A stretch of DNA of 64,000 bases, from IMG/VR virus record IMGVR_UViG_3300025133_009608, positions 62,001-126,000 of that record. One strand, given 5' to 3'. Shown here piece after piece: positions 36,424 to 60,460 of the stretch (its first letter is position 1; each line of letters opens with the position of its first letter). A program made the position numbers and the translations under genes. A model generated the notes under the pieces. It saw nothing but the letters and a program-made list of their open reading frames with translations, searched no databases and was not told where the DNA came from.

Positions 36424-36452
36424 GTTATACTCGAATAACATATAAATATCAA
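36424..36452 (-). promoter_or_regulatory. Sigma-70-type promoter TTGATA-N17-TATAAC
   Basis: Minus strand TTGATA TTTATATGTTATTCGAG TATAAC, about 20 nt upstream of the 36403 start. Confidence 0.55.
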
Positions 36453-37456
36453 TCTATTTTAATATTATGCTCTTCTCCTATGGCCCCTCTCATCTGTTGG
36501 GCGATCCACTGATGTTCTATCTGTGCGTGCGTAGAATCTTTCAAATTAAGATATCCCTTAAAATCATCTATATAAAAGGAAATATATAACTCGGTTATTC
36601 GCCCTTCTGGTAAAATGTATCGAGCAACCTCTCTTAATCTTTTATGTTCATCATTTGATATTATCCCATCTTTTTTTGCAATCCTCGATGACTTCATTAA
36701 TCTAAGGTATTCTTCGAAAACAGCCGCTACTGATGATCGGTATATATCAAGCATTATAGAACTACATGCAGAATCTCCAATAGTATGTCCCATTACCTTT
36801 CCGAATATTTCTGATGTATCATCAAATTTGCTAATAAAATCCTGCGGGACTATTCCGATCCTCTCGCTCGTCATATTTGCAGAACAAGTGCTATGTCCTA
36901 GGATCTGAATGGCTATTGAAAGTGGACACTTTATTCTCCAAGTTGCCCTACTTTGAGATTCAGAGCCAGCATCATGATATGAAACAAGCTCCACTTCCAT
37001 ATTGTGTTCTCCGAGCCTCTCACTTGCGTCAATTTGATTGTCAACTTTTTGCCCAAAAAGATCAAACTTTTCGACCTTTGCAGCAAGGGCTGGCGAATCT
37101 TCGACGAAAAGTTGCCACGCCGAAAGGCTACTATGCCCACCCTTTCTTTCGGATAATAGCGAGGTCTTTGCGAAGTTCCATAGATCCATTGTCATGGTAT
37201 AGACTCCTCCGGTCAGCTCTACTCTTGAAAACTTATTATGCAAGTAGCTATCCATGCCCACCACGGCTTCGTCTCGGCCCCATGAAAACGTCATGGTTAC
37301 GGACTCAAAGGGAGATGTATGAAGATTTTCAATAAGAAAATCAATTACTTCGTCAACCTCGTCGTCTGTTCTTTCTCCCGCCCTTGTCTCACCTGGGACT
37401 GATATCCATGCAGAGTTGGCAACATCTGTCAGATTTCCAGTTATTTTCAAATTCAC
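36449..37456 (-). CDS. ThyX (flavin-dependent thymidylate synthase)-like protein with degenerate active-site motif
   Basis: LHTSPFES, IKCPLSIAIQILGHSTCSANMTSERI (canonical ARQxxRHRxxSxNxxSxRY), EVARYILP and LNLKDSTHAQIE. Confidence 0.75.
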   Translation of the reverse strand: MNLKITGNLTDVANSAWISVPGETRAGERTDDEVDEVIDFLIENLHTSPFESVTMTFSWGRDEAVVGMDSYLHNKFSRVELTGGVYTMTMDLWNFAKTSLLSERKGGHSSLSAWQLFVEDSPALAAKVEKFDLFGQKVDNQIDASERLGEHNMEVELVSYHDAGSESQSRATWRIKCPLSIAIQILGHSTCSANMTSERIGIVPQDFISKFDDTSEIFGKVMGHTIGDSACSSIMLDIYRSSVAAVFEEYLRLMKSSRIAKKDGIISNDEHKRLREVARYILPEGRITELYISFYIDDFKGYLNLKDSTHAQIEHQWIAQQMRGAIGEEHNIKID

Positions 37457-38655
37457 TATTCGCTCTTTGACTTGCAGATCATTGTCAACTTTTTATCGTT
37501 ATCGAATACTATGTTTGCAGCCTCCATTATCGACTCTGGCGTAACCAAAGAAAGAGATGCCATATAGCTCTCGATCGATGGTAGTCCGATCAGCTTCTCT
37601 CTCATTCTGTACTGAGCCATGCCAGAAGCGCTCTCAATCAATCCGTAAGAAGATGCTCTCATTTTATTCTTTGCTCTTTGCAACTCTTCATCAGATATTC
37701 TCGTTGTCTTGATCTTCTCTACCTCGTCTGATATAACTGATAGCATTTCATCTACATTCTCCCCCCGAGTAGACCCGCTAATCAAGGAGAGGGAGCCTCG
37801 CTCCCATTCGTTTAGAGATGAAGATATTCCATAAACAAGTCCTCTTTTTTCTCTTACCTCTGTAAAGAGTCGGCTATCCATCCCTCCTCCGAGAACTGAC
37901 ATTAAAAGCCTAGTCGCCGGAATGTGGTCAGACCCTCGGTTTACTCCGGGGGTTCCTATCCAAACATAGGTATGCTCTAGTCCCGGCCTATTAATCTCGG
38001 CCACTTCGGAGCTAGAATACGAAGAGTCGGCATAATTAAAGCGCCGGGAAACCTTTCCGTTCTCTTTTCCAAAGTGCTTCTCCATAAGAAGATTTGCCTT
38101 TTCCTCGGAAAGATTAGAGCAAAGAGAAACAACCGCATCTCTTTTCTTGCAATATTCCTTGTGAAAGGCATCAACCTCATCTCTAGTAAACTTGCTAATT
38201 GTTTCCTGCGTTCCAATGACTGGCGTGCCGATATAATTGTCAAAAAACTTGTCGGAAAACTTATTCCAGATGTATGAATAATGATTATCTAATCTTGAGA
38301 TTTCCTCTTCCTTCACAACCTCTCTTTCTTTCAAAAACTCATCCTCTGGAAATACCGAATCAAATACTATGTTTGACATTATTTCCATTGCAACATCTAG
38401 ATTTTCGTATGGAACCGTTACGTGATATGCCACAATTTCATGAGAAGTGAAGGCATTTACAGACCCCCCTAAAAAGCCAATTTCCCTTTGAATTTCAAAT
38501 GCAGTTCTTTTGTTCGTACCCTTGAATATGCAATGCTCCAGCATATGTGCTATGCCGGGATTAAAATCCATAGATGACTCCGTTCTAGAGCCAGCATCAA
38601 AGGCTATTACAACCGTTGATAATTTGCTTTCTGTCTTGCTATATGCGTGAATCAT
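37456..38655 (-). CDS. M16 (insulinase/pitrilysin-family) zinc peptidase
   Basis: Inverted Zn motif GIAHMLEHCIFKGT, NAFTS, EREVVKEE, LGGGMDSRLFTEVREKRGLVY. Confidence 0.92.
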   Translation of the reverse strand: MIHAYSKTESKLSTVVIAFDAGSRTESSMDFNPGIAHMLEHCIFKGTNKRTAFEIQREIGFLGGSVNAFTSHEIVAYHVTVPYENLDVAMEIMSNIVFDSVFPEDEFLKEREVVKEEEISRLDNHYSYIWNKFSDKFFDNYIGTPVIGTQETISKFTRDEVDAFHKEYCKKRDAVVSLCSNLSEEKANLLMEKHFGKENGKVSRRFNYADSSYSSSEVAEINRPGLEHTYVWIGTPGVNRGSDHIPATRLLMSVLGGGMDSRLFTEVREKRGLVYGISSSLNEWERGSLSLISGSTRGENVDEMLSVISDEVEKIKTTRISDEELQRAKNKMRASSYGLIESASGMAQYRMREKLIGLPSIESYMASLSLVTPESIMEAANIVFDNDKKLTMICKSKSE

Positions 38656-38702
38656 TTGGTTCCTAAAAAAATGGCGACCAATTAACTGATCGCCATCATA
38701 TC

Positions 38703-39911
38703 TTACTTCTTTTTCTGTTCGATTACTACTTTCTTTCCGTATGGAAACTCAACTCCTCGGTCTTGATCGCAAACCGCCCACAACATTCTATACTTGGGCT
38801 TCTCTGGAAATGCGGCATACCCATCCGTAAAGATGACTAGTCCATCATAGTTCTTTTCCTCTGCAAGCTCCATTACCGGATGAAAACAAGTTCCGCCCCG
38901 ACCTACGATGTCAATCTTAGAAGCCTTTTTGGAGTACTCCTTTGGCTCTCCATAGATCTTGGTATCGAACTGAATGAAGTCGGCCTTTACGTGATCGATC
39001 ATCCCATTCAATTCTGTGGCGAAATATGAAAGTTGCTCGTCTGAAACTGATCCTGATGTATCAAATGCAATCAGAAGTCTACTAGTATAGTTTCTCTTAC
39101 TTCCCGGAGAAGTAACTCCATATCGCCTATTGGGGCGCATTCTTGTGTTCCTTCTCCCCATCATTACAAGCTTGTTGATAAAGTATCTAACTTCCTTCTT
39201 CCAATTGACAACCGGCTTGTTGGCCGCGATAATTTGAGCCGCAAGGTTACCAGAGATATTTCCCCAGCCCTTCTTCTCCTGCTCTTTAATCGCCTTCTCT
39301 GCGATATTTCGAACCTTTTCCTCTACAATGTCGTCTTCAAAATCTTCCCACATAGAGTGGTCATCGACAGTATCCCCCTTGCCTTCGATTACCTTTTCGA
39401 AGTCATTGTCCTCGCCTGCTTCTTTCTTCAGGCTTTCGTAATAAAACTCAGCAGACTCGTTGTTATTAAGATCGAACTGCTTTGGATAAAGCGCCCCGTC
39501 AGGAAGCCCTTCGATGTGACAGTTAATCGCCAAGTCTGCCGCAATATTATATCCACGAAAGTTATATGCAAAATGCTTTGCGCGAGTAAGGTGGTGAAGT
39601 AATACATGCAATGCCTCATGCTTCAATACTCCCCTAAGCTCAGTGGACGAAAGACCTTCGATAAACTCTGGATTATAATATAGCGCCAAGTCTACTCGCC
39701 GAATCACTCCGACCGCCATCGTAGGGATCTTTTTTGATTCGCGCTTATTAAGATGGAGGAATACCTCTCCATATAGTGGCTGAAAACATACAAGTTTTGA
39801 GATTGCAGATTCTAGCTTTGCTTTAATTTGTGAGTTTGCCATGATAATATCCTTTTCGACCTGGTTGGAAGTGTGAGGCATCTGTAACCCATGCCTCCCT
39901 GCGGTTTGCAA
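38703..39911 (-). CDS. Metallopeptidase-like (HExxH) plus VWA domain protein (DUF2201-like); likely start at MANSQIK
   Basis: LKHEALHVLL.H, NIAADLAIN, MIDAS DTSGSVS, GRGGTCF, LVIFTDGY. Confidence 0.8.
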   Translation of the reverse strand: MQTAGRHGLQMPHTSNQVEKDIIMANSQIKAKLESAISKLVCFQPLYGEVFLHLNKRESKKIPTMAVGVIRRVDLALYYNPEFIEGLSSTELRGVLKHEALHVLLHHLTRAKHFAYNFRGYNIAADLAINCHIEGLPDGALYPKQFDLNNNESAEFYYESLKKEAGEDNDFEKVIEGKGDTVDDHSMWEDFEDDIVEEKVRNIAEKAIKEQEKKGWGNISGNLAAQIIAANKPVVNWKKEVRYFINKLVMMGRRNTRMRPNRRYGVTSPGSKRNYTSRLLIAFDTSGSVSDEQLSYFATELNGMIDHVKADFIQFDTKIYGEPKEYSKKASKIDIVGRGGTCFHPVMELAEEKNYDGLVIFTDGYAAFPEKPKYRMLWAVCDQDRGVEFPYGKKVVIEQKKK

Positions 39912-39915
39912 CTAA

Positions 39916-40992
39916 CTAGTTAGTAAGATAGATTTGCTTCAAGTGCTCGCGGAAATCTTCATCTCCCTGCCACTCCATCACAATCTTCTTTGTCTTTGCG
40001 CCGCTAAGTAGCGCAACCCAAGACTGTGATGCAACATCGTTTGGAAGCATCATAAAGAACTCCCGAAGAGCCTCACGTTGCTTTGTCTTGGTCTTAGTAA
40101 GCGAACGACCGTTAACCTCTGCAACTACTGACCTTGCAAGCGCCGCGATAACCTCAATGTCATTGCAAGCACTCTCGATCTTTGGCTTGGTCTTTTCGAA
40201 GTTATCGAGAACATCTTCTGGCCGCAACTGAGAGAATTCATTCTCTACAAACTTCTGGAACATTACGGCGATCTCTCGGCCAAGCCATCCTTTTGCAACT
40301 TGTGTTAGCATTCCATCGTCTTTAGATTCAATGAGGCTCATCCCCATGATCGAATCGCTAAAAGCAACCCAGCTTCGACGCGAAGGATAAATACGGCCCG
40401 CTTCAAGGTTCCCGACTGGTGGGTCTAGAAGGTTTTGGTTTCGATTAATGAACTCAATACAAGTTGCATGAACCCCTTCTTCTCGCGCCCAGTCAAGCCA
40501 CTCTGTTGCAGATGGATCAAAGTCAACGTGAAACCATCGATCATGAAGTGCGGGATCTAGCTCGACCACATCATATTCATCGTCAGAGTTTACAGCCGCG
40601 ACTACTCGCCAGCCATCGGGAAGCTTTTGTCCATCCAATCGTCTGTCCAAGCAAATCTCAAAGACGGCTTGCAAGACATCTTTGGATGCCCGATTAAGCT
40701 CATCAAAAAACAGGATTCCGTGACTATCGGGATCTGTTGGCCACCACTCTTGCTTTAGAAAGCGAGTAACTCCATTTTCCGCGTCAAGGTGTGGCATACC
40801 TTTAATGTCACCAACCTCGCACTGAGAGAGGCGAACGTCCCAAAAGCCATAATCATTTCCACTCTCAGCGGAAAGCTCGTCGGCAGTTTGACGTACAACG
40901 CTGGACTTTCCAACCCCATGTTTTGCATGGAGCATAATGGACTTATCCGATGGCATTGTCTTTAGAACAGACTTTGTTTGTGCAATATTCAT
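39916..40992 (-). CDS. MoxR-like AAA+ ATPase
   Basis: HGVGKS, LFFDELNRA, VVAAVN, LDPALHDRW, PSRRSW; adjacent to the VWA gene. Confidence 0.85.
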   Translation of the reverse strand: MNIAQTKSVLKTMPSDKSIMLHAKHGVGKSSVVRQTADELSAESGNDYGFWDVRLSQCEVGDIKGMPHLDAENGVTRFLKQEWWPTDPDSHGILFFDELNRASKDVLQAVFEICLDRRLDGQKLPDGWRVVAAVNSDDEYDVVELDPALHDRWFHVDFDPSATEWLDWAREEGVHATCIEFINRNQNLLDPPVGNLEAGRIYPSRRSWVAFSDSIMGMSLIESKDDGMLTQVAKGWLGREIAVMFQKFVENEFSQLRPEDVLDNFEKTKPKIESACNDIEVIAALARSVVAEVNGRSLTKTKTKQREALREFFMMLPNDVASQSWVALLSGAKTKKIVMEWQGDEDFREHLKQIYLTN

Positions 40993-41050: not shown

Positions 41051-41056
41051 ATAGGT

Positions 41057-41085
41057 ATAATAAATCGATATTATTTATATCAAAA
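41057..41085 (-). promoter_or_regulatory. Conserved 29-bp element, copy 1
   Basis: Plus strand ATAATAAATCGATATTATTTATATCAAAA; 28/29 to consensus; upstream of the MoxR gene. Confidence 0.8.
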
Positions 41086-41089
41086 TTTT

Positions 41090-41440
41090 CTATTTCTTCT
41101 CATTACTCGGTGGTAACGGGTTTTCATTTAGCCTTGTGTTTATATCTTGCAATCTTTCTCTAAGACCCTTAAAGGAGTCAATCATAGATCCAAGATCCTG
41201 ATCTCCACCAATAGTGGCTCCGGCCCCAATAGCGCCACCAAAGCTTCCTATAATATCCTTTACTTGATCCATCTTTTCTGGAGTAAGCATTTCATCTACA
41301 CTTGAAAACTCCTTTGTTATATCGGATAGCTTATCTATCTTTTCTCCCATGTCATCGATCTTAGATTCCATTCGATCTAGTCGCTCTAAAATATCCGAAT
41401 ATGATACACAGTCGTCGTTATTTTTCATTTGTTTTTCCAT
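41090..41440 (-). CDS. Hypothetical protein
   Basis: 116-aa helical ORF coupled to the upstream gene. Confidence 0.55.
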   Translation of the reverse strand: MEKQMKNNDDCVSYSDILERLDRMESKIDDMGEKIDKLSDITKEFSSVDEMLTPEKMDQVKDIIGSFGGAIGAGATIGGDQDLGSMIDSFKGLRERLQDINTRLNENPLPPSNEKK

Positions 41441-42511
41441 TTACTTTCTAGTTCCGTAGGCATGAGACTCTGCGAGCCCCGCGTTTGTTATCTTCATAAA
41501 AGAAGCGTTTTCTCTCAGCTCGCTAATAGTCACTGCATTCGCATAACTCATTCCAGATCGAAGCCCTCCCATGAATTCGTCAAGAATATATTTAGCCTTG
41601 CCTTTCACCGGGATATGTGTCGACACTCCCTCGGCGCAAGTCCCCGGCTTCAGCCCTCCTCTTTTATCTTCTTGAATCTCTCTACTTGCAGCGCCACGAT
41701 AGACCTTCATTTTTCTTCCGTCTATATTCACAATGTCACCGGGAGACTCTATCGTTCCAGCAAAAAGCCCTCCAGCCATGATTGCATCGGCTCCAGCTAC
41801 TATGCTCTTAATCATATCTGACGGATACCTTATCCCTCCATCTGCAATTATAGATACATCTTTATAAGATGTATTTTCGGCCCTTGCTCTTTGGCAATCA
41901 ACAATTGTTGATAGCAATGGAACTCCAAACCCCGTCATTATCCGCGTTGAGCAAATCGCTCCAGACCCGATTGACGCCCTAACCGCATTGGCCCCCGCAT
42001 CTGCCAAGTAAGCAAACCCATCGCCGGTTGCTACATTCCCGGCCATTATTTGGTAATTAGAATTATCTTTAATAAACTCAATCATTTCCTTCATCAGTAT
42101 TGAGTGACCATTTGCAATATCAATAGCAACCCAATCAATTATCGAGCCTATTTCATTTTTTAGCGACAAGAACCTTTCTCGACCCTCTCTTCCCACTCCA
42201 ACTGCCGCTACAACTGGGGCTTCATCGGAATGCTCTGATACTTGCCTCAGTGAGGCAATCTGCTCCCCCGTAGAACTAAACCTATGAACAACCCCCATTG
42301 CCCCATGAGAGCCAAGCTCAGAGGCCATTAACGGCCCCGTAACAGTATCCATAGGAGAGGATATCATTGGAACCTCCAACTTGGTGTTTCCAATGAAAGT
42401 TGCAGTGTCAGGAGAGAGTCTGGATCTCACTTCTGAATATGTCGGAACAAGCAAAACATCATCAAATGATAGTCCAGCATTCCAGATAAAGGAGTTCTTT
42501 GAGTTACTCAT
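41441..42511 (-). CDS. IMPDH/GMP-reductase family enzyme without CBS domains, leaning GMP reductase
   Basis: [31 protein letters not shown], catalytic [40 protein letters not shown]; no Arg-Tyr flap dyad seen. Confidence 0.85.
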
Positions 42512-43150
42512 CTAATTCCTATTTGAATAAAAGTTTTGGAATTCTCTAGCGAATTCTTCAGATTTGCCATAAAATCGAAGATTGAGGCAAAACTTATCGA
42601 ACAGGTAGTGTGAAGCCTCATGTGCGATTAGCAGCTCATTATTTCTAGAGCCCCTGTCCGTTAGGAATATCGCCGACTGATTTGGATCAGATGGAATCCC
42701 ATCGTAAAGTCCAAAAAGATTGAACGCCGCCAAATTTCCAACCCCAGCAGAAGATCCCCACTGGTTAAACCTATTGTGATCGTTCAACACATTAGATGAT
42801 ACATGGTATATATCAAGGCTCAAATTCGGCCTACACTCAACTATTCTTACGCCTCTCCTCTCAAGGAATACCACATATTCTGCTATAGTTCTTTGTAAAA
42901 CATTATTCAACAATGTTGATGAGAACGCCCCAGAAGATGCGTAACTCTGACTCTGATGATATAAAGAGTACCTGACTGAGTGGCTTCTGGTCGCCACAGA
43001 GTGATTTCCAGATGAAACAAAGTTTATATCAGAGGTTCCTCGATATGGAAACGCCTCAGAGCCTCCGGGGGCCAGCAATATTAGGGAGATTAATAATCCT
43101 TTAAGTATTTTGCTCATCCGTTTCTCTCCTGTTGTCGCGACGTTTTCCAC
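42512..43150 (-). CDS. Exported protein with HExxH metalloprotease-like motif (likely start MSKILKG)
   Basis: Signal-peptide-like MSKILKGLLISLILLAPGGSEA; LIAHEASHY. Confidence 0.55.
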   Translation of the reverse strand: MENVATTGEKRMSKILKGLLISLILLAPGGSEAFPYRGTSDINFVSSGNHSVATRSHSVRYSLYHQSQSYASSGAFSSTLLNNVLQRTIAEYVVFLERRGVRIVECRPNLSLDIYHVSSNVLNDHNRFNQWGSSAGVGNLAAFNLFGLYDGIPSDPNQSAIFLTDRGSRNNELLIAHEASHYLFDKFCLNLRFYGKSEEFAREFQNFYSNRN

Positions 43151-43301
43151 GGAGAATTTGAACCTCTAAGTCTGGGTTCAAGTCAATCATTCCAACATGA
43201 TTTCTTGGAACCCCGCGATGTTCCCAGTGTGTTTTTGTCACCTTGTTGTATACTTTAATGTTTAAAGTATTTCTTTCATTTCTGCGTCGGTTATCTACCA
43301 T
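43101..43301 (-). CDS. Small hypothetical protein
   Basis: 66-aa co-oriented ORF. Confidence 0.4.
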   Translation of the reverse strand: MVDNRRRNERNTLNIKVYNKVTKTHWEHRGVPRNHVGMIDLNPDLEVQILRGKRRDNRRETDEQNT

Positions 43302-43308
43302 GATCTTC

Positions 43309-44283
43309 CTATTCTAGTTCTTCGATTATTTTATTTAGCCGTCGTGAAAGATTGGGATGCTGAGAAGCCGCAGGGATCAGCCATGGAAGGTTGTTTTTTG
43401 AAAAAACTCCCATTAGACCCTCTACTACTTCGTAGTCTCCCGTATCCACAAAAAGCATAAGCCGCTGCTCAATTTTGGCAATCTCTTTCTTGTTATCATT
43501 TAAGATAATAAGCTGGGCAGGATTTAGGTCGCGCTCCTTTGTCCAATATCCAAATGGATATCTAAGCTGATTCACTCTGGCTACAAAGTTATTAATGAGG
43601 GTTCTTTTCATTGTCTTTGTTCCCCTCTTTGCAACATGAGCCAGTATGTCGGGCGAAACAGCGTTTCTGTCAGACGCTTTTCTGATAATAGAATTCCTTT
43701 CCGAAACGGCGCCTTTCTTTCTGCTTATCCTGTTCCATAGATAATTATAGAAACTAGGATCTTCAGAAGTACTGCTCCCAACGGACTCCCACATGCGATA
43801 TGTTCGAACACTCTGATCTGTCAGGCCATGCCTTGAGATCTCTGAAAGATAATCAAAATCAGTTATTGACCTTGAAATCTCCGCTCTAAGCCGATTTGAT
43901 TCGATCTCAAGATCGACTGAGATGGAGTTATAAATTTTATTGATAATGAATGCTTTTACACTTGGAGTTAACCCTGGAATGTCATCTGAGTTACATCTCA
44001 ATACCTGAGACAAGAGTGCGTCCCTTGCTTCAGGGAGCTGCTCCCACAGGTAGGTGAAGTTTTCTCCGGTCAAAATCTTGAACTCCCCGGAGTTATAATA
44101 ATAACTCCGAGAACAGTCCGCCGTTACTGCCGACTTAACTGCCAACTCATAAAAGGCCTCATCTGGAGTCCAGTTTGAGTGTAGCGAAATTAAATTTAAA
44201 ATATCAACTCTTGAATTTTCTTTTGCCTCTTCCATCTTTACTCTCCCGAGTCCAATCGTGCTTGAAGTCTTTTTGCTATCCAC
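43309..44283 (-). CDS. Helical-repeat (HEAT-like) family protein A
   Basis: C-terminal EQRLMLFVDTGDYEVVEGL...LPWLI similar to the 53606 gene. Confidence 0.55.
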   Translation of the reverse strand: MDSKKTSSTIGLGRVKMEEAKENSRVDILNLISLHSNWTPDEAFYELAVKSAVTADCSRSYYYNSGEFKILTGENFTYLWEQLPEARDALLSQVLRCNSDDIPGLTPSVKAFIINKIYNSISVDLEIESNRLRAEISRSITDFDYLSEISRHGLTDQSVRTYRMWESVGSSTSEDPSFYNYLWNRISRKKGAVSERNSIIRKASDRNAVSPDILAHVAKRGTKTMKRTLINNFVARVNQLRYPFGYWTKERDLNPAQLIILNDNKKEIAKIEQRLMLFVDTGDYEVVEGLMGVFSKNNLPWLIPAASQHPNLSRRLNKIIEELE

Positions 44284-45008
44284 TTGTTTTTCATATTCCT
44301 ATTGCCAAGAAGCATAGGGATGCTGGAAATATTTATCTTGTCTATAAGAACCGAGAATACCGCTCCAGATATTTCTTTTGTCATTTTTGACAACCTTGAG
44401 TATCCCATTGGAGCCAAGTGAACCGCCTGTACTCTAATGTCTTTTGTTTTATCATCTAGCATTTCATCCAGACACTCTACCGTTCCAAGCCTTGAGAACA
44501 CAACCTCTCTTATCTTTGCATCCTTACTTCTCCTTAGCTGCCTCAAGGTATCAATAGTGCAGTATTGAGCCGCAAATAACTGCGCTGGGCCATTAAGATT
44601 TAGGGCGACATCATTTAGGATCGATATATCTTCATATGAAGATGAACGCAGAAGAGATTCAATCATAGTGCCGTAGTTAAAGCTATATCTGCCGGATGAT
44701 GTTTCTGCCTCATTCTCTATTGCCATCTTGATGACTCTGGAGCCAAGTCTCGGATTTGATTTGGCGATAGCCGCGAAAGCCATCTTCGAATACCAATCAT
44801 TTTGTCCCGAAAGAAATGCCCTAGAAAACAACTCTTCGCTTGAAAGAATCTGAAGAAGCGCCTCCTCTTCTGTTTCTGAAAAGATAAAATTTGTCTTCGA
44901 ATAACTTCCAGACCTATAGTTGGCCTCTATGAGCTTTATTCCATTATTTATCTTATCGATTGTGTCGTTTATTTGTTCCGTCATCATATTCAACTCCAAT
45001 AAATTCAT
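44238..45008 (-). CDS. Helical-repeat (HEAT-like) family protein B
   Basis: RSKDAKIR...SRLGTVECLDEMLDDKTKDIR, similar to the 59446 gene. Confidence 0.6.
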   Translation of the reverse strand: MNLLELNMMTEQINDTIDKINNGIKLIEANYRSGSYSKTNFIFSETEEEALLQILSSEELFSRAFLSGQNDWYSKMAFAAIAKSNPRLGSRVIKMAIENEAETSSGRYSFNYGTMIESLLRSSSYEDISILNDVALNLNGPAQLFAAQYCTIDTLRQLRRSKDAKIREVVFSRLGTVECLDEMLDDKTKDIRVQAVHLAPMGYSRLSKMTKEISGAVFSVLIDKINISSIPMLLGNRNMKNKWIAKRLQARLDSGE

Positions 45009-45822
45009 CTATATTATCAACTCTAAATCCTGCGGCCGACCGATGCCCCCCGCCTCCAAAGCTTGAGGCAATCTCTGAAACATCAATTCCATTCTCTCTC
45101 GATCTCAAAGAAACCCTAAACCCGCTTCCATCGAAATAATAAGCCGCCGCAAATGGGCTCCCCTCTGAAAGTTGACCTGCTATTTCCGACTGGAAAAAAG
45201 ATATATTTATAGCCGGAACTTCATAGCCAGCAATATTCATCTTAAAAGAATTCTTAATTAGGCTAGCTATTAGGACATCTTTATACCTTAGAATTCCCCT
45301 TCCGGTACTCACCACCTTTGAATGAGCAGGAGAGTCGCTATCCAATAGAGAGATATGCAGGTCATCCCATGCCTCAAATGTCTTTGGATAAGAATCAATT
45401 GTGGAAAGTATTTCTCTTGAGAAGTCCAACTTCCAATTCCACAAGTCTCTATCTTCAACATGCAGAACGATCGGAGGGACGTTATCTTCTCCGAAAAGAT
45501 ACTTCCAAGAAAGATATGCTCCGGAGTGACTCATGTCAAACTCACAGAAATCCAAATCCCCCAGCTCTTTCTCCGCCGTAATATGATGGTCTATAACGAC
45601 CAATGATTTTGCGGCATCCTTCATCTTCAACAATGTAAGCCGATTATAGGAAAAATCCACAATATATACGGTCTTGCCCTCTATCGGTGGAGGTGGCTCT
45701 CCGTGCTTTGCCGGAATGTACTTGGCTTTATCCCCATACTTTTTCCAAAATGCGAAGGCAGAGCAAAACCCGTCTGGACAATTTGCATGATATAATACAA
45801 CTATATTTTTTTCTTCTTCCAC
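44953..45822 (-). CDS. DHH/DHHA1-family phosphoesterase
   Basis: YHANCPDG, YIVDFS, VIDHH, VEDRDLW, SLRS, GGGGHRSAAGF. Confidence 0.88.
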   Translation of the reverse strand: MEEEKNIVVLYHANCPDGFCSAFAFWKKYGDKAKYIPAKHGEPPPPIEGKTVYIVDFSYNRLTLLKMKDAAKSLVVIDHHITAEKELGDLDFCEFDMSHSGAYLSWKYLFGEDNVPPIVLHVEDRDLWNWKLDFSREILSTIDSYPKTFEAWDDLHISLLDSDSPAHSKVVSTGRGILRYKDVLIASLIKNSFKMNIAGYEVPAINISFFQSEIAGQLSEGSPFAAAYYFDGSGFRVSLRSRENGIDVSEIASSFGGGGHRSAAGFRVDNIDEFIGVEYDDGTNKRHNR

Positions 45823-46842
45823 TTAAATAACCTCTGGAGAGTATGAAAACAATACTTCCTTTACATTAGAGGTATTTTCCTCCAGCTTCCTTTCTATAAA
45901 TACTTTCATCTTAGCCAAGTTTAAAAACTCAATAATAGAATCATTATGGAACAACTTAAACACATTGAATTCTTCAAGTATATCGCACTTGCTTATTACA
46001 AGATGAGTCGTTCCGGTAACTTCTGCGGCATAAATTAGATTATCTAAATTCATCCAATTTACTTTCCTTCTTCTCCCGGTTGTAACTCCATATTCTTTCC
46101 CCAACTCCCCAAGCTCTGATAGCTCCGGATCATCAAGAAGGGACGCCGGGAATCTTGGATCTTCTCCTGAGCGGGTATCGTAAATTTTCGAACACCCCCA
46201 TATCTCATTAATCTTTTGAGGGGCGAATCCCAAACTGCAAGCTGCATAAGGAAGCGTTTCGCTGGAAGTTACATATGGATATAACCCATGATTTACATCA
46301 AGATAAAATCCCTGAGCACCTTCGCATAAAATGTTTCCGGAAAGTCTGCCATTCCAAATTATAGATGAATCCAAAGTTCCGTCTGCAAGTATCCCCGTTC
46401 TTGCATACTTAGAGGCATAAGCCGGAGCAATTCCTTTTGATGTTGTTCCCAACTTTGCCGCAAGGTTCTTTTTATCAAAAGCAATATGTTCGTCTGTAAC
46501 GATATGACAATTTGGATGAACCTTTACCAGAGAGGTATCAAATCCATTTTGATTTAAATAATCGATCTCTTTATAAAAAGACTCCGGATGCAGAACGCAC
46601 CCCGGCCCGATAAGGGATGTTATTCCATGGAAAACTCCGGACGGGATGAGGTGGGTTTGATACTTTTTCCCATCAAGAAATACAGTGTGTCCTGCGTTGT
46701 TTCCTCCGGCCCATCTTGCAACCATATTATAATAACTTGATCCATCAGGGCTCTTCTTTTTTGAAAGGGCAGAGGAGATTTTCCCTTTACCCTCGTCCCC
46801 CCAGCAAAGCCCAACTGCTATATCAACCGAATTAACTGTCAT
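45823..46842 (-). CDS. purA: Adenylosuccinate synthetase (short form)
   Basis: WGDEGKGK, GGNNAGHT, HLIPSG, GTTSKGIAPAY, EGAQG, YPYVTSS, GVTTGRRR. Confidence 0.93.
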   Translation of the reverse strand: MTVNSVDIAVGLCWGDEGKGKISSALSKKKSPDGSSYYNMVARWAGGNNAGHTVFLDGKKYQTHLIPSGVFHGITSLIGPGCVLHPESFYKEIDYLNQNGFDTSLVKVHPNCHIVTDEHIAFDKKNLAAKLGTTSKGIAPAYASKYARTGILADGTLDSSIIWNGRLSGNILCEGAQGFYLDVNHGLYPYVTSSETLPYAACSLGFAPQKINEIWGCSKIYDTRSGEDPRFPASLLDDPELSELGELGKEYGVTTGRRRKVNWMNLDNLIYAAEVTGTTHLVISKCDILEEFNVFKLFHNDSIIEFLNLAKMKVFIERKLEENTSNVKEVLFSYSPEVI

Positions 46843-47398
46843 CAGTTTCTCCTAAAGATTCTTGTGATTCAATCTTCTTTATTTTACTTGGGCGGCGCAG
46901 AAAAGTAATGCCCTCTTTGTGAGAAGATACTGTTGCGGTAAAAGTTATCGTATCGCCGGGACCGAAAGAATAAGCCTTTGTGGTTTTAAAGAAATACTTC
47001 CAACCATTTTGATCTGCCGCCAAAATCGCTGGCATCGGATACTGAGAGTTTCCTTTCGGGTCGCAAATCTTAACAATATTGAATGGGCCAAGATCATATC
47101 TAGTTCCCTCAAGATAGCTCGGGGTATCTAATGATATTGATGTAATTAAAGATTCTGTCCACTTGTTTATTGAGGCAATCCATTTCTCGGACAGCTTGTG
47201 CGGAGACTCTGTAATTATAGATATTGTTTTCTCGATCCAATCATTAGTCTTTCTTCCCCTCTCTCTTGCCAAAAGGGGTACGGCCATCGGATGAATCGCA
47301 TTTAGATTCTTTTCTGACAGCCGACTAATCTCTTCTTTTGATAAACGCTTTTTTCTGCGCCTCTTCTTCGGAGCATTATTGTTGAATATATTAATCAT
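46832..47398 (-). CDS. Hypothetical protein with possible C-terminal OB fold (start revised to MINIF)
   Basis: YFFKTTK..SFGPGDTITFTATVSSH...TFLRRP; ATG at 47398 lies 34 nt downstream of the conserved element. Confidence 0.55.
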   Translation of the reverse strand: MINIFNNNAPKKRRRKKRLSKEEISRLSEKNLNAIHPMAVPLLARERGRKTNDWIEKTISIITESPHKLSEKWIASINKWTESLITSISLDTPSYLEGTRYDLGPFNIVKICDPKGNSQYPMPAILAADQNGWKYFFKTTKAYSFGPGDTITFTATVSSHKEGITFLRRPSKIKKIESQESLGETDDS

Positions 47399-47431
47399 CT
47401 TAAAACAATCTCGGTTGCGGTTCAACTACCA

Positions 47432-47460
47432 ATAATGAATCGAGATTATTTATATCAAAA
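47432..47460 (-). promoter_or_regulatory. Conserved 29-bp element, copy 2
   Basis: ATAATGAATCGAGATTATTTATATCAAAA; 28/29 to consensus. Confidence 0.8.
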
Positions 47461-47481
47461 TTTAATGACGATGATTATATT

Positions 47482-50400
47482 CTATCGGAGACGTCTGGCG
47501 AGATTAGTCTCTCCCAAGCCGTTTAATATGGCCGCGATGATACATGTGTTTGCTATCTTACCAAGAGTCTCTGTCCGGTCCGGGATGGGCGAATATTCGC
47601 CATTAGTTGTGGAAAAAAAATAGACCCCAAACCTTCCAAGGAGATAGTTTCCAAGCAGATCCCTGGCCGCTTGGACATATTCTGTAGGCTCGGGCGAGTT
47701 GTCTAATAAAACCTTTTTTAATCCTCCCCCGTCATTCCGAAACGCTCTTCCAGATAGATCGACGGAAGTGTTCGGGCTACTTATAGAATAAATATCACCG
47801 GGACCATTTCCTGTTTGATTGGAAATTAGATTACTGATGGTCCTGGTAGTAATCAACTCATTTACTTTGGCCTGAATTTCGGCCCCTTGATTCTGGCTAG
47901 CACGCGCAGCCGCTTGCTGCTGAGTCGGGGCGTTCGTGGGGGTTCTGCCGCTGAGTCCTGAAATGGATGTGCCAGCACCATTAGCAGCAGCAGCAGTATC
48001 CATATCCATAATCATTTTCTTTATATCGTTTTTAATTGCAGTATTCTCCATCCAAAGATCGACGAACCTTACGGTGCCTCCCGCGCTTCTCTTATATCTT
48101 CCAAATACATACATTCCATAAGGTTCTTCTCCATGCTTACTCCATAGGGAATCAAGATGGGAGCTGAGATTCGCGCTTCCAATTGCGTCCTTTGCCGACT
48201 CCCAAGCGTTATTTAATGCCGAATAACTGGGCAAGTTATCCGGCCACTCTTGGTCGCGGCTCCCAAAGAAGTTTCTAATAATATCGTCAGTTACACTCGC
48301 TTCCCTTTGGGTGTTCTCGACGGATGCATAAGGATCAAGTCGCACCCCACTAGCCTGCTGTGATTCGCTCATTTGATCAATGGTACTTTTCAGGCGAGAA
48401 AGAGCTGCTTCCGGACCGGATGAGGATTCCCAAGACTCAGCGTAACTTGCATCATTCCTCATTCTTGTAAAAAAAGGATCATGGGAAGCTGGAACGTATC
48501 CAGGATTGTTTTTAAAAGAATCATGAGCCGCTACCCAAAAATTATACCAAGCCGTCTGTGTATTTGAACCCCAATCATCGTCGATATTACCGGTGTAGTA
48601 TCGACCGGTTTGTAGTTCTGTTTGTATCTTTCCAATATTGCCGTTTGCGGCGGTTTGCCGTGGCTGCGGCGAATAATTAGGAAAGGGATTTACATTTCCG
48701 TTTGCTGAGGCGCCACCTGAGCCGCCTCTGGGGCCACCTCCTCTGGAGGCTCCAGCGGGTGGGGATTGACCGATGGGTTGCGCCGTCTTATCTAATGAAT
48801 CCTTTTTTTTTGATCTGCTCGATATTGCCCTTAGGGCCACATGATCATCTGCAAACGACTCCAGCATCCATGTAGCAGCGGACCCTGCTTTTGATAGCCA
48901 CCTTCCATTCATCTTAATCCAGAGTTTTCCTTCGTCGCTGGCATCGTCAATCGGCCCCGTTTGATCAGCATCAATATCGTCCTTCCAGGTATAATCTCTC
49001 AAAGGAATAACTATGCCCCTGCTTTGACGAGCTTGGGCTATGGTGTTGAGCGAGCGGAAAAAAAGCACTCTAGTATTTTCCGAATCAAATACGTGGTGGG
49101 CTCCACTATCATAGACTATGTGCGACACCATTTCTGGGTTTAGAATAAAGGGAGATTCGTCAAGATTTCCTTCGACTATTTCAAAATTGGTATCGCCCAC
49201 GGTTTTTGTATTATTTGCCCGGCTGGTGACTGCGACTGGAGCATAACCTCTATCATAAGCAGACTTGAGAGCTTCCAGGGTGTCCTTAGCACCTGCGTAG
49301 TAAGGAGCAGACTGACTCCCCGGATTAGTGCCGGTCCCGAATAAAAAATCGTTTAATTCAGTAACATCGTCATCCGAGCCCCCATGAGCAAGGTCTTGTG
49401 TTTGTTGCTCGAAGCTCTGTCTAAATAATGGAAAGGTGGATAAACTGCCGCGATTGTAGGCTCTTTTTATGCTCCTTATTATTACATCAAAAGTTGTTGC
49501 GTCCGTACTCTGAAATAGGTTGTCGTCGTCCTCTTTGATTGCAAGTCTCGCCGCGTCAAGAAAGCTGCCCATGGCACTGAAAATAGGATCACCTGTTGCC
49601 ATCTTTCTAATCATATTTGATCGAAGTAATGAAAGTCTCTCCAGCCGAGCATTATGGATATCATAAGCATGGCGCAACCCTTCGGCCGCAGCACGCGCAT
49701 CGTTGTAGAAAGGAGCAGATTGACGCCCCGGATTATTGCCGGTCCTGAATAAAAAATCGTTTAATTCAGTAACATCGTCATCCGAGCCCCCTTGAGCAAG
49801 GCCTTGTGTTTGTTGCTCGAAGCTCTGTTTAAATAATGGAAAGGTGGATAAATTGCCGCGATTGTACCGATCTAATAATACACGCTCAATTGATTCAAAG
49901 GCCGTGAAGTCACGGCCCTGAAATAGGTTGTCGTCGTCCTCGTTAATTGCTCTTTTTGTTGCCGCCAAAAAAGCCCGCATGGCAGGCCGAATAGTGTCAG
50001 GAGTATTCTTCTCCGGTTTGGCGGCCAAGTCATCAGGGGTATTCTGCGGAGCCTGCACAGGACCATGGAGGTCGCCCGTATAGGCCATCTTTCTAATCAT
50101 ATTTGATTGAGCGGCATACCCGGAGTTATTTAAAGCCAAAGCTAATTTCTTTAATTCATTATTCATTTTACTTTCCCTTGATGTAACAACCCTTGATTCA
50201 TCGCCGAAGCCCAGCCACGAAAAGAAGTCTTTCTCAGATTTATCTTTATTATTAGTAGGATTTCCAAGAACATTATACTCGGAAGTTCCGGAATCTTTTC
50301 TTTGAATATTAACGGGAGGTTGATCCTCCGGCAAATCCATTGGCGATGACTTTCCGAAGCCCGAAGAATCCGAAGCCTCTTGATCGCCATCTCCATAATT

Positions 50401-54740: not shown

Positions 54741-54774
54741 TCTATATTCCTTTTTTCGATAGGTTCACTGAGGT

Positions 54775-54803
54775 ATAATAAATCGAGATTATTTATATCA
54801 AAA
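54775..54803 (-). promoter_or_regulatory. Conserved 29-bp element, copy 3
   Basis: ATAATAAATCGAGATTATTTATATCAAAA (consensus). Confidence 0.8.
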
Positions 54804-54807
54804 CTTT

Positions 54808-60391: not shown

Positions 60392-60402
60392 CTTATACAC
60401 CA

Positions 60403-60431
60403 ATAATAAATCGAGATTATTTATATCAAAA
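60403..60431 (-). promoter_or_regulatory. Conserved 29-bp element, copy 4
   Basis: ATAATAAATCGAGATTATTTATATCAAAA, identical to copy 3. Confidence 0.8.
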
Positions 60432-60460
60432 TTTATTGACTACCGAATAGATGCAAGAAA

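What the first reader, a model, noticed from the sequence alone, without database searches (positions are those of the whole stretch)
41441..46842. Possible G-to-A purine rebalancing pathway: GMP-reductase-like enzyme, PurA and a DHH nuclease in one operon
Seen: the IMPDH/GMPR gene lacks CBS domains and the IMPDH flap Arg-Tyr dyad. Its flap is [16 protein letters not shown]...AEG, and IDIANGHS resembles GMPR IDVANGYS/IDIAHGHS. PurA and a DHH phosphoesterase lie in the same co-oriented run downstream of element copy 2. Established: GMPR converts GMP to IMP plus NH3, PurA commits IMP towards AMP, and DHH/NrnA enzymes release mononucleotides. Inference: an AT-richer phage converts scavenged host guanine nucleotides to adenine nucleotides, which would help most in a high-GC host.
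Basis: partly seen in the sequence, partly recalled or inferred. Interest (0 to 1): 0.66.

Follow-up and report, generated by a model that had tools for sequence, protein, structure and literature searches.

The report
Phage purine-interconversion gene pair
A 317-kb marine jumbo phage carries a complete but minimal adenylosuccinate synthetase next to a CBS-less enzyme of the IMP-dehydrogenase/GMP-reductase family whose active-site flap is built like a GMP reductase's, so it probably turns guanine nucleotides into adenine nucleotides; the enzyme's activity and the phage's host are both unproven.

Summary
On the minus strand of a 316,664-bp marine virus record (43.3% GC) lie a short-form PurA (45823-46842), a DHH/DHHA1 phosphoesterase (44953-45822), four ORFs with no nucleotide function, and a 356-aa CBS-less IMPDH/GMPR-family gene (41441-42511). 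Two copies of a promoter-like repeat bracket them.

PurA keeps every E. coli catalytic and ligand residue I checked and is not PurZ.

The IMPDH/GMPR-like protein is a mosaic:
- GMPR-like: the flap has exactly the E. coli GuaC length, no Arg-Tyr dyad and no CBS domain. It carries the IDxANG motif, and Cys/Thr/Glu are invariant.
- IMPDH-like: the SSPMDT motif and the C-terminal ESH segment.

It forms its own virus-only clade. AU tests reject neither a GuaC nor a GuaB affinity, and no NCBIfam cut-off is reached.

The pairing with a short PurA recurs in every related jumbo-phage locus with enough flank. It also recurs in nine loci of a second viral group whose intervening genes differ, which supports a functional link. 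The phage has no PurB or GuaA.

The DHH link rests only on synteny within one lineage. The host and its GC content could not be determined.

Verdict: a plausible G-to-A purine route built from known enzyme kinds. GMPR activity is probable (about 0.5) but unproven. Interest is moderate.

The parts
47428..47473 (-). Promoter-like repeat element, the copy directly upstream of the unit. On the gene strand the core reads TTGATA, 15 nt, TATTAT.
   Evidence: Family D3 of the repeat finder. The genome holds 9 copies, all on the minus strand and all between genes. The generic sigma-70 scan found no more sites than chance in this region, so promoter function is inferred, not shown.
46832..47425 (-). ORF of 197 aa, first gene after the element, function unknown
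   Evidence: No Pfam or PHROG match. An ORF of similar size sits in the same position in related phages.
45823..46842 (-). Short-form adenylosuccinate synthetase (PurA), 339 aa
   Evidence: PF00709 2.2e-78. PDB PurA 8e-57 against PurZ 3.5e-15. D13, K16, N38, H41, T129, R143, Q224, T239, T300, T301, R303, R305, K331, D333 and S414 of E. coli PurA are all conserved. It lacks a roughly 50-aa middle insertion and about 30 aa near the C-terminus.
44953..45822 (-). Stand-alone DHH/DHHA1 phosphoesterase, 289 aa
   Evidence: DHHA1 3.9e-7, DHH 3.2e-5. phrog_4771 'DHH phosphoesterase' 3.5e-81. The closest solved structures are NrnA-type enzymes, matched only through the GGGH region (E about 1e-5). The DHH and GGGH motifs are visible in the translation.
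44238..45008 (-). ORF of 256 aa, function unknown
   Evidence: No significant family match. A roughly 245-aa ORF occupies this position in L002, L004, L095 and L096 but not in L097; homology between them was not tested.
43309..44283 (-). ORF of 324 aa, function unknown
   Evidence: No family match. A similar-sized ORF is present in L002 and L095 and absent in L004, L096 and L097.
43101..43301 (-). Small ORF of 66 aa
   Evidence: A roughly 60-aa ORF is kept at this position in all five related loci. No family match.
42512..43150 (-). ORF of 212 aa with a hydrophobic N-terminus and an invariant HExxH; its stop abuts the IMPDH-like start
   Evidence: In an alignment of six orthologues H177, E178, H181, C106, C188, D150 and E198 are invariant. 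No Pfam or PHROG match. The protein atlas gave only weak leads.
41441..42511 (-). CBS-less IMPDH/GMPR-family enzyme, 356 aa, with a GMPR-type truncated flap: a probable GMP reductase
   Evidence: PF00478 2e-93. NCBIfam: IMPDH 238 bits (cut-off 481.5) and GMPR 199.7 bits (cut-off 397). The best PDB match is 3r2g, a CBS-less Legionella protein. C187, T189 and E294 are invariant in the 14-sequence family alignment. Flap alignment. Trees and AU tests. Motif table.
41090..41440 (-). ORF of 116 aa, last gene before the next element copy
   Evidence: Only weak sub-threshold matches (XhlA, DUF16). A roughly 100-120-aa ORF follows the IMPDH-like gene in all related loci.
41053..41098 (-). Second copy of the promoter-like element, upstream of the AAA_5 gene; it marks the end of the PurA-to-IMPDH-like unit
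36449..40992 (-). Conserved downstream context: MoxR-like AAA_5 ATPase (39916-40992), DUF2201 VWA/metallopeptidase (38703-39911), terminator-like hairpin (38670-38697), M16 peptidase (37456-38655), ThyX-like thymidylate synthase (36449-37456)
   Evidence: Pfam. PHROG thymidylate synthase. A 12-bp stem followed by a T run. The same gene order is kept in related phages.

Best explanation
The phage encodes two consecutive steps of the textbook guanine-to-adenine nucleotide interconversion. A virus-specific, CBS-less member of the IMPDH/GMPR family acts as a GMP reductase (GMP + NADPH gives IMP + NH3). A minimal but complete adenylosuccinate synthetase then commits that IMP towards AMP (IMP + Asp + GTP gives adenylosuccinate). 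The last step, adenylosuccinate lyase (PurB), is left to the host. Shown: both genes are present and intact; the PurA active site is complete; the IMPDH/GMPR-like protein has a GuaC-type flap, no CBS domain and a conserved Cys/Thr/Glu triad; the two genes are persistent neighbours in two viral groups; they lie between two copies of a promoter-like repeat. Inferred: the direction of the first reaction (reductive deamination, not IMP oxidation), co-transcription, and the physiological purpose of shifting scavenged purines from G to A for an AT-richer genome. The adjacent DHH phosphoesterase may supply mononucleotides, but nothing ties it to the pair beyond synteny in one lineage.
For: Flap: the window protein and 120 relatives conserve a flap with the same spacing as E. 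coli GuaC (Ser, 8 residues, GG, 7 residues, EG) and have no RY. GMPR is described as lacking the Arg418-Tyr419 dyad and having a truncated flap, because hydrolysis of E-XMP* must be avoided (PMC2525682). No CBS domain is present; IMPDHs are reported to carry one (PMC7160140). The IDxANG motif is shared with E. coli GuaC and the XacN1 and Cr30 GMP reductases, whereas GuaB rows have (S/A)HGHS. C187, T189 and E294 are invariant; these correspond to the Cys186/Thr188/Glu289 needed for E. coli GMPR function. PurA: all 15 E. coli catalytic and ligand residues checked are conserved, including the guanine-specific (S/N)KxD, and it is far nearer PurA than PurZ. Pairing: PurA lies 3-4.4 kb upstream of the IMPDH-like gene in all 5 distinct metagenomic loci fetched and in 13 of 13 IMG/VR group-1 loci with enough flank. 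It also lies near it in 9 loci of a more distant group whose intervening genes differ (Dam methylases, dUTPase/dCTP-deaminase-like, ClpP, thioredoxin). The genome has no GuaA and no purine phosphoribosyltransferase, so an IMPDH would feed only host enzymes, while PurA needs a source of IMP. RNR, a dUTPase-family gene, a weak dCMP-deaminase-like ORF and ThyX are present, giving a parallel pyrimidine route.
Against: The protein reaches no NCBIfam GMPR cut-off (199.7 against 397; 192.5 against 344; 181 against 492) and scores higher against IMPDH models and IMPDH structures than against canonical GMPRs. In trees it is not inside the GuaC clade and sits on the GuaB side of a 97% SH-aLRT split. The three columns that cleanly separate GuaB from GuaC references all read GuaB-like. 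The C-terminal AGLxESH segment is IMPDH-like. A conserved Arg in the flap (D-[KR]-R-G-G) aligns with the IMPDH catalytic Arg in one pairwise alignment. Five other phage genomes with GMPR-like genes have no PurA, and five group-2 contigs have none either, so the pairing is not obligatory. No PurB is encoded. There is no expression data and no biochemical data for any member of this clade.
Confidence: 0.5

Rival explanations
1. The enzyme is an IMP dehydrogenase, possibly a slow or unusual one. The phage would then encode the two committing enzymes at the IMP branch point (IMPDH towards GMP, PurA towards AMP) and boost purine nucleotide output in both directions from host-made IMP, rather than converting G to A.
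For: Bit scores are higher against IMPDH than against canonical GMPR models and structures. The SSPMDT motif, Ala103 and the C-terminal ESH segment are GuaB-like. The AU test does not reject a family-plus-GuaB clade (p 0.50). A conserved flap Arg could act as a base.
Against: There is no Tyr of the dyad, and the flap is at least 7 residues shorter than in the GuaB rows and equal in length to GuaC's. Loss of Arg418 or Tyr419 cuts the hydrolysis step about 1000-fold and 20-fold respectively. No CBS domain is present. The family lies outside the GuaB clade, which has 90-97% support. The phage has no GuaA to use XMP. To my knowledge no short-flap, dyad-less IMPDH is known.
Confidence: 0.2
2. The pair acts on non-standard substrates. 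One possibility is deoxynucleotides (dGMP to dIMP to succinyl-dAMP to dAMP), converting host-DNA breakdown products directly. Another is a modified purine for the phage DNA. The precedent is PurZ, a PurA homologue that uses dGMP.
For: The IMPDH/GMPR-like clade is found only in viral or virus-like contigs; the nearest cellular genomes reach 44% identity. PurA is a trimmed form with Val273 replaced by Ser, a position near the ribose in E. coli PurA by my recollection. Adenine methyltransferases and dUTPase/dCTP-deaminase-like genes sit between or beside the pair in group 2. PHROG groups this PurA with PurZ-type enzymes under one family label.
Against: All canonical PurA residues, including Asp13 and the GTP-specific KxD, are kept. 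The PurZ model scores 105 bits against a cut-off of 300. The ribose-binding Asp of the ADGG motif is kept in the IMPDH-like protein. No DatZ/MazZ-type partner was sought or seen. No direct evidence exists for any modified base.
Confidence: 0.1
3. The genes are neighbours only because this phage lineage has a frozen gene order. PurA, DHH and the IMPDH-like enzyme act independently; for example, DHH may be a phosphodiesterase that destroys host cyclic-nucleotide defence signals.
For: The whole block from PurA to HU is syntenic across group 1, including genes with no nucleotide role such as the M16 peptidase, MoxR/VWA pair, Hsp20 and KH. Four unrelated ORFs separate DHH from the IMPDH-like gene. 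The DHH family occurs in many large phages where no PurA or GMPR is annotated at the hit. DHH phosphodiesterases of jumbo phages have been proposed as counter-defence enzymes (PMC7824862).
Against: PurA and the IMPDH-like gene also lie near each other in group-2 viruses where the rest of the neighbourhood differs. The two enzymes share IMP as product and substrate.
Confidence: 0.2

Closest known systems
GMP reductase GuaC, type 1 (E. coli GuaC, human GMPR1/2; annotated copies in Xanthomonas phage XacN1 and Caulobacter phage Cr30)
   Same: No CBS domain. Same flap length and the GG pair, with no Arg-Tyr dyad. IDxANG motif. Catalytic Cys/Thr/Glu. About 350 aa.
   Different: About 30-34% identity to the phage GuaC-type proteins. 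Not in their clade. The N-terminal SSPMDT motif and the C-terminal ESH segment are IMPDH-like. Arg286 of human GMPR2 is replaced by Thr. NCBIfam cut-offs are missed.
PDB 3r2g, a CBS-less 'IMP dehydrogenase' of Legionella pneumophila (a structural-genomics entry; I found no paper that tests its activity)
   Same: Best solved-structure match (E 1.5e-69). It aligns end to end with no gap in the flap and has no CBS domain.
   Different: The cellular relatives whose flap motif matches that of 3r2g group with GuaC in the tree, apart from the window family; 3r2g itself was not in the tree. Their flap motif differs (MASREAQEDFxG...EWKTAEG).
IMP dehydrogenase GuaB
   Same: Highest overall similarity of the barrel core (221-231 bits to CBS-deleted or whole IMPDHs). 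SSPMDT motif, Cys loop and C-terminal ESH segment.
   Different: No Bateman domain, no RY dyad, a flap at least 7 residues shorter, and a position outside the GuaB clade.
GMP reductases with IMPDH-like cores (Trypanosoma brucei GMPR, mycobacterial GuaB1)
   Same: They show that GMPR activity exists in proteins that look like IMPDH overall (PMC7160140, PMC9790621). TbGMPR scores 210 bits to the window protein.
   Different: Both carry CBS domains; the window protein has none.
Adenylosuccinate synthetase PurA, short archaeal-type form (e.g. Pyrococcus horikoshii, PDB 2d7u/5k7x, 339-340 aa)
   Same: Same length and collinear alignment over residues 8-290. Full catalytic residue set.
   Different: The sequence is closer to bacterial PurA in the conserved blocks (8e-57 against 2e-40). 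It is virus-encoded.
PurZ (2-aminoadenine pathway of phages S-2L and phiVC8)
   Same: A phage-encoded short PurA homologue; the same PHROG family label.
   Different: Weak similarity (3.5e-15 and 1.4e-8). The NF038379 model scores 105 bits against a cut-off of 300. PurA residues and the GTP motif are retained.
NrnA-type stand-alone DHH/DHHA1 phosphoesterases
   Same: Two-domain architecture of about 290-340 aa, with DHH and GGGH motifs.
   Different: Only the DHHA1 end aligns significantly. The NrnA equivalog scores 25 bits against a cut-off of 350. The substrate is unknown.

Membership tests
GMP reductase (EC 1.7.1.7) | IMPDH/GMPR (beta/alpha)8 domain with catalytic Cys, Thr and Glu (E. coli Cys186/Thr188/Glu289) | tested here: met
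   PF00478 2e-93. C187, T189 and E294 are invariant in the family alignment. Their requirement in E. coli GMPR: PMC2525682.
GMP reductase (EC 1.7.1.7) | Truncated flap without the Arg-Tyr dyad | tested here: met
   Same flap length as E. coli GuaC and the XacN1 and Cr30 GMPRs, with no RY. Conserved in 120 relatives. Criterion from PMC2525682.
GMP reductase (EC 1.7.1.7) | Score above a curated GMPR equivalog cut-off (NF003470, NF003966, TIGR01305, TIGR01306, NF052358) | tested here: not met
   199.7/397, 192.5/344, 181.2/492, 167/466 and 176/675 bits.
GMP reductase (EC 1.7.1.7) | Placement within a clade of characterised GMPRs | tested here: inconclusive
   The family forms its own clade (99-100% support) outside GuaC types 1 and 2. 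The AU test does not reject union with GuaC (p 0.56) or with GuaB (p 0.50).
GMP reductase (EC 1.7.1.7) | NADPH-dependent reductive deamination of GMP to IMP | not testable with these tools
   Needs an enzyme assay or genetic complementation.
IMP dehydrogenase (EC 1.1.1.205) | Arg-Tyr dyad on a long mobile flap | tested here: not met
   The flap is at least 7 residues shorter than in the GuaB rows and has no Tyr.
IMP dehydrogenase (EC 1.1.1.205) | CBS/Bateman subdomain inserted in the barrel | tested here: not met
   A single unbroken PF00478 match and no CBS hit.
IMP dehydrogenase (EC 1.1.1.205) | Score above the TIGR01302 or other IMPDH equivalog cut-off | tested here: not met
   238/481.5, 196/779 and 140/585 bits.
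Adenylosuccinate synthetase PurA (EC 6.3.4.4) | P-loop GDEGKGK with Asp13, plus His41, the IMP ligands (N38, T129, R143, Q224, T239) and the aspartate ligands (T300, T301, R303, R305) | tested here: met
   All are conserved in the window protein and in five orthologues when aligned to E. coli PurA.
Adenylosuccinate synthetase PurA (EC 6.3.4.4) | Guanine-specific (N/T/S)KxD motif and Ser414 | tested here: met
   SKCD aligns with E. coli TKLD, and Ser aligns with S414.
Adenylosuccinate synthetase PurA (EC 6.3.4.4) | Score above curated cut-offs | tested here: inconclusive
   Pfam 264 bits against a cut-off of 27: met. NCBIfam equivalogs 259.7/402 and 248/396: not met, probably because of the two deletions.
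PurZ (succino-amino-deoxyadenylate synthase) | Score above the NF038379 cut-off and closer similarity to PurZ than to PurA | tested here: not met
   105 bits against a cut-off of 300. PDB PurZ 3.5e-15 and 1.4e-8 against PurA 8e-57.
NrnA-type DHH/DHHA1 phosphoesterase | DHH and DHHA1 domains with DHH and GGGH motifs | tested here: met
   Pfam DHHA1 30.9 bits (cut-off 25.9) and DHH 24.6 bits (cut-off 28.1). phrog_4771 3.5e-81. Both motifs are visible in the translation.
NrnA-type DHH/DHHA1 phosphoesterase | NrnA equivalog score; nanoRNA or pAp hydrolysis | tested here: not met
   NF053633 scores 25 bits against a cut-off of 350. The activity cannot be tested here.

The most novel reading that the evidence does not exclude
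This virus-only clade of the IMPDH/GMPR family and its trimmed PurA form a dedicated viral purine-conversion pair with a substrate range that cellular enzymes lack. One example would be working directly on deoxynucleotides released from host DNA (dGMP to dIMP to dAMP). That would be a purine counterpart of the dCMP-deaminase/thymidylate-synthase route. Another example would be making a non-canonical purine.
Probability: 0.08. Interest if true: 0.8.

Novelty: new variant of a known kind. Interest (0 to 1): 0.42.

Why it matters
If the enzyme is a GMP reductase, a widespread group of uncultured marine large phages carries its own G-to-A purine shunt. The shunt would be an auxiliary metabolic function not described in the papers I could search. 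It would add a purine counterpart to the well-known phage C-to-T route (dCMP or dCTP deaminase plus thymidylate synthase), and it would help explain how AT-richer phages balance nucleotide pools scavenged from host RNA and DNA. The protein also defines a distinct, virus-specific branch of the IMPDH/GMPR family that mixes IMPDH-like and GMPR-like determinants. That makes it a natural test case for what sets reaction specificity in this family. If it turns out to be an ordinary IMPDH or GMPR, the finding is a routine auxiliary-gene annotation.

Tried and rejected
- Nucleotide search of the 5.4-kb region against 50,697 phage records: no match, so there is no cultured relative.
- PurZ or Z-base reading of the PurA-like gene: rejected on model scores and residue inventory.
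- Phylogeny to decide GuaB against GuaC: two quick maximum-likelihood trees (LG+G4, and C20 PMSF) plus AU tests left it unresolved. The 'careful' IQ-TREE run did not finish in 300 s, so the quick tree printed in its place was used. Rows were thinned by removing near-duplicate Ignavibacteriota, Patescibacteria and other rows; they are listed in the scripts.
- Specificity-determining columns: only three clean ones, all GuaB-like. This is too few to decide.
- Phage-encoded completion of either branch: no PurB, no GuaA and no phosphoribosyltransferase.
- PurA in other phages with GMPR-like genes (XacN1, Mel-JY01, Cr30, G, LR756508): none.
- Host assignment through the phage tmRNA: one 77% match over 156 nt, on a single contig of a Halobacteriovorax MAG. 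There was none in 120 other genomes of that order, one weak hit among 300 other genomes of the phylum, and none in 401 Pseudomonadota. I judged this uninformative, because the contig may be mis-binned or itself viral.
- A Pelagibacteraceae single-cell contig with a homologue has 44% GC and DnaJ plus PP-loop genes. It looks foreign to SAR11 and gives no host call.
- Sequencing runs: marine and hydrothermal-vent metagenomes only, with no RNA run.
- Literature: no paper was found that links phage GMP reductase with PurA or with GC mismatch. The Hedstrom 2012 review is not held.
- The large representative-protein search, structure prediction and complex prediction were not run, because none would separate GMPR from IMPDH.

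Full report
**Where the window lies.** The window is bases 62001-126000 of a 316,664-bp linear IMG/VR virus record that CheckV rates 94% complete. The genome has 43.3% GC, seven tRNA genes and a tmRNA gene. Of the 206 non-overlapping ORFs of 150 aa or more, 197 lie on the minus strand. The DNA occurs in marine metagenomes, with partial matches in hydrothermal-vent metagenomes. No RNA run holds it. No record in the phage collection matches the region at the nucleotide level.

**The observation.** On the minus strand, in transcription order, the genes are:
- a 197-aa ORF (46832-47425)
- a PurA-like gene (45823-46842; PF00709, 2.2e-78)
- a DHH/DHHA1 phosphoesterase (44953-45822; phrog_4771, 3.5e-81)
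- ORFs of 256, 324, 66 and 212 aa with no nucleotide-metabolism signature
- an IMPDH/GMPR-family gene (41441-42511; PF00478, 2e-93, in one unbroken stretch, so there is no CBS insert)
- a 116-aa ORF (41090-41440)

The genes abut or overlap. A 46-nt repeat sits just upstream of the first ORF (47428-47473) and again just after the last (41053-41098). Its core occurs nine times in the genome, always on the gene strand and between genes. The generic sigma-70 scan found no more sites than chance, so promoter function is an inference.

**PurA.** Aligned with E. coli PurA and five orthologues from related phages, the protein keeps Asp13, Lys16, Asn38, His41, Thr129, Arg143, Gln224, Thr239, Thr300, Thr301, Arg303, Arg305, Lys331, Asp333 and Ser414. 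Only Val273 is changed, to Ser. It lacks a helical insertion of about 50 residues and about 30 residues near the C-terminus. That gives it the length and collinearity of the archaeal short form (PDB 2d7u/5k7x). It matches solved PurA structures at 8e-57 and PurZ at only 3.5e-15 and 1.4e-8. The PurZ model scores 105 bits against a cut-off of 300. I read it as a genuine GTP-dependent adenylosuccinate synthetase. The assignment of functions to the E. coli residues is from my own knowledge of the Honzatko-laboratory structures, not from a tool.

**The IMPDH/GMPR-like enzyme: similarity and relatives.** It is the only PF00478 gene in the genome. No NCBIfam equivalog cut-off is reached: IMPDH TIGR01302 scores 238 of 481.5 bits and GMP reductase NF003470 scores 199.7 of 397. 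The best solved structure is 3r2g, a CBS-less Legionella protein deposited as 'IMP dehydrogenase' (1.5e-69). IMPDH catalytic domains follow at 200-231 bits, T. brucei GMPR at 210, and human GMPR1/2 at 164-171. A word search finds thousands of relatives. The top 120 are 50-88% identical, 312-374 aa long and mostly from marine metagenomes. In cellular genomes the best identity is 44%.

**The IMPDH/GMPR-like enzyme: GMPR-like features.**
- The flap has the same spacing as E. coli GuaC and the annotated GMP reductases of phages XacN1 and Cr30 (Ser, eight residues, Gly-Gly, seven residues, Glu-Gly). The GuaB rows have at least seven more residues, including the Arg-Tyr dyad.
- The flap is strongly conserved across the 120 relatives.
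- Cys187, Thr189 and Glu294 are invariant in the 14-sequence family alignment.
- Min et al. state that GMPR lacks the Arg418-Tyr419 dyad and has a truncated flap because hydrolysis of E-XMP* must be avoided. They also show that Cys186, Thr188 and Glu289 are needed for E. coli GMPR function (PMC2525682).
- The IDxANG motif is shared with type-1 GuaC and not with GuaB.

**The IMPDH/GMPR-like enzyme: IMPDH-like features and phylogeny.**
- The SSPMDT motif, Ala103 and the C-terminal AGLxESH segment are GuaB-like.
- Both trees put the family in its own clade (99-100% SH-aLRT). It lies outside the GuaC clade (which includes the cellular relatives with a 3r2g-type flap) and outside the GuaB clade.
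- AU tests reject neither family-plus-GuaC (p 0.56) nor family-plus-GuaB (p 0.50).
- T. brucei GMPR and mycobacterial GuaB1 show that GMP reductases can have IMPDH-like cores.

The protein is therefore a mosaic. The one feature with a mechanistic rationale, the flap, points to GMP reductase. I put that at about one half, IMPDH at about one fifth, and the rest on other or independent functions.

**Linkage of the two genes.** In group 1, the order is PurA, DHH, two to four small ORFs, an HExxH ORF, the IMPDH-like gene, an AAA_5 ATPase, a DUF2201 protein, usually an M16 peptidase, ThyX, Hsp20, a KH protein and HU. All five distinct metagenomic loci fetched keep this order; they come from contigs of up to 405 kb. 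So do 13 of 13 IMG/VR loci with enough upstream flank. That alone could be frozen synteny.

A second group gives independent support. Its members are 41-47% identical, have an even shorter flap, and come from genomes of about 180 kb by CheckV's completeness estimates. They have none of DHH, AAA_5, DUF2201 or M16 nearby. Yet nine loci carry a short PurA (full-length copies 331-355 aa, with the P-loop and NKxD intact) on the same strand, either 2-6 kb upstream or about 10.7 kb downstream. The genes in between are different: adenine methyltransferases, a dUTPase/dCTP-deaminase-like protein, ClpP and thioredoxin.

The pairing is not universal. Five group-2 contigs of 36-60 kb have no PurA. Neither do XacN1, Cr30, phage G, Mel-JY01 or LR756508, which carry GMPR-like genes.

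**The rest of the pathway.** The phage has no PurB, no GuaA and no purine phosphoribosyltransferase. It does have a ribonucleotide reductase, a dUTPase-family gene, a weak dCMP-deaminase-like ORF and ThyX. PurA needs a source of IMP. In a cell whose nucleic acids are being recycled, GMP reductase is the obvious source. An IMPDH would instead compete with PurA for IMP and hand XMP to a host enzyme. This is an argument from pathway logic, not a measurement.

**DHH.** The protein has the DHH and GGGH motifs and the NrnA-like two-domain size, but only its DHHA1 end aligns with solved NrnA enzymes (E about 1e-5). Its family is common in large phages of Caulobacter, Vibrio, Xanthomonas, Pseudomonas and Serratia, with no PurA or GMPR annotated at the hit. 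It is absent next to the pair in group 2. A role in releasing mononucleotides is possible. So is a role in degrading cyclic-nucleotide defence signals, as proposed for jumbo-phage DHH enzymes (PMC7824862).

**Host and GC content.** No host could be assigned (details are under Tried and rejected). Group-1 relatives have 36-44% GC in the fetched loci. The phage's tRNAs read AGA, UUA, UCA, AAA and AAY, plus a CAU anticodon. The genome uses AGA for 39% of Arg codons and AUA for 42% of Ile codons. Phage tRNAs tend to cover codons that are common in the phage and rare in the host; this is my own knowledge. So the tRNA set is weak, indirect support for a GC-richer host.

The cultured phages with GuaC-type genes show 50% (XacN1), 38% (Cr30) and 30% (G) GC in the fetched loci. 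Their hosts are at roughly 65%, 67% and 38% by my recollection. But most phages are AT-richer than their hosts, so this is not discriminating. Bacterial rRNA, the largest nucleotide store in a cell, is G-rich whatever the genome's GC content (my own knowledge).

**Comparison and novelty.** GMP reductase followed by PurA and PurB is the textbook route from guanine to adenine nucleotides. GMP reductase and PurA-like genes are each already annotated in phages. Two things are new here. The first is a virus-specific branch of the IMPDH/GMPR family with mixed determinants. The second is its recurrent pairing with a trimmed PurA in abundant uncultured marine large phages. I found neither described in the searchable literature. 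I class it as a new variant of a known kind, of moderate interest. Its value depends on an enzyme assay.

Noticed in passing
window 41053-41098, 47428-47473, 54771-54816, 60399-60444; also genome positions 127567, 142942, 160029, 170916, 171289: A conserved intergenic element of about 46 nt. On the gene strand its core reads TTGATA, 15 nt, TATTAT. It occurs nine times, always on the minus strand and only between genome positions 103 and 171 kb. It is probably a phage-specific promoter or operator that defines a temporal gene class.
   Followed up: partly
window 42512-43150 (-): A 212-aa ORF with a hydrophobic N-terminus and invariant HExxH, two Cys, Asp and Glu. It is conserved immediately upstream of the IMPDH-like gene in all six group-1 phages aligned. 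It is a possible secreted or membrane zinc peptidase with no family assignment.
   Followed up: partly
genome G000:C1:135597-135999 (locus L098), outside the window: A phage-encoded tmRNA with tag ANNNNHFYAAALAA. It resembles (77% over 156 nt, with a similar tag) a tmRNA on one contig of a Halobacteriovorax MAG. No other of the 120 genomes searched in that order has a match. That contig may be viral or mis-binned.
   Followed up: partly
whole genome; tRNA genes at 126117-126761, 140501-142578 and 184496-184684: Codon usage is unusual: AGA plus AGG make up 63% of Arg codons and ATA 42% of Ile codons. The tRNA with anticodon CAT could be a lysidine-type tRNA-Ile that reads ATA rather than a tRNA-Met. 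A related virus-like contig (L015) encodes a PP-loop (TilS-like) ATPase.
   Followed up: no
L125:9444-9986, L133:9495-10025; L125:8103-9092, L130:8870-9388, L133:8461-9498, L171:8623-9102: In group-2 viruses a dUTPase/dCTP-deaminase-like gene sits directly upstream of the IMPDH-like gene, and DNA methyltransferases (three N6-adenine-specific, one N6_N4 type) lie between it and PurA. If the first is a dCTP deaminase, a C-to-U deaminating enzyme lies next to a putative G-to-I one.
   Followed up: partly
window 36449-40992 (-): A conserved block of a MoxR-like AAA_5 ATPase, a DUF2201 VWA/metallopeptidase, an M16 (insulinase-type) peptidase and ThyX. A strong terminator-like hairpin (12-bp stem plus a T run) at 38670-38697 lies between the DUF2201 and M16 genes.
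   Followed up: no
window 47482-50640 (-) and 56443-56572: The 1052-aa ORF upstream of the unit contains two internal 162-nt repeats (49297-49458 and 49705-49866, 94% identical). A separate 27-nt tandem repeat (four copies) lies at 56443-56572.
   Followed up: no
L015 (Pelagibacteraceae single-cell assembly, 7.1-kb contig): The contig has 44% GC, all genes on one strand, and DnaJ, a PP-loop ATPase and a group-2 IMPDH-like gene. It is unlike SAR11 DNA, which is about 30% GC by my knowledge. It is probably viral DNA captured with the cell, or contamination.
   Followed up: partly
L096, L097, L130: Relatives in both viral groups encode a Cpn60/GroEL-type chaperonin near the block. Hsp20, a KH-domain protein and HU follow ThyX in group 1.
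   Followed up: no
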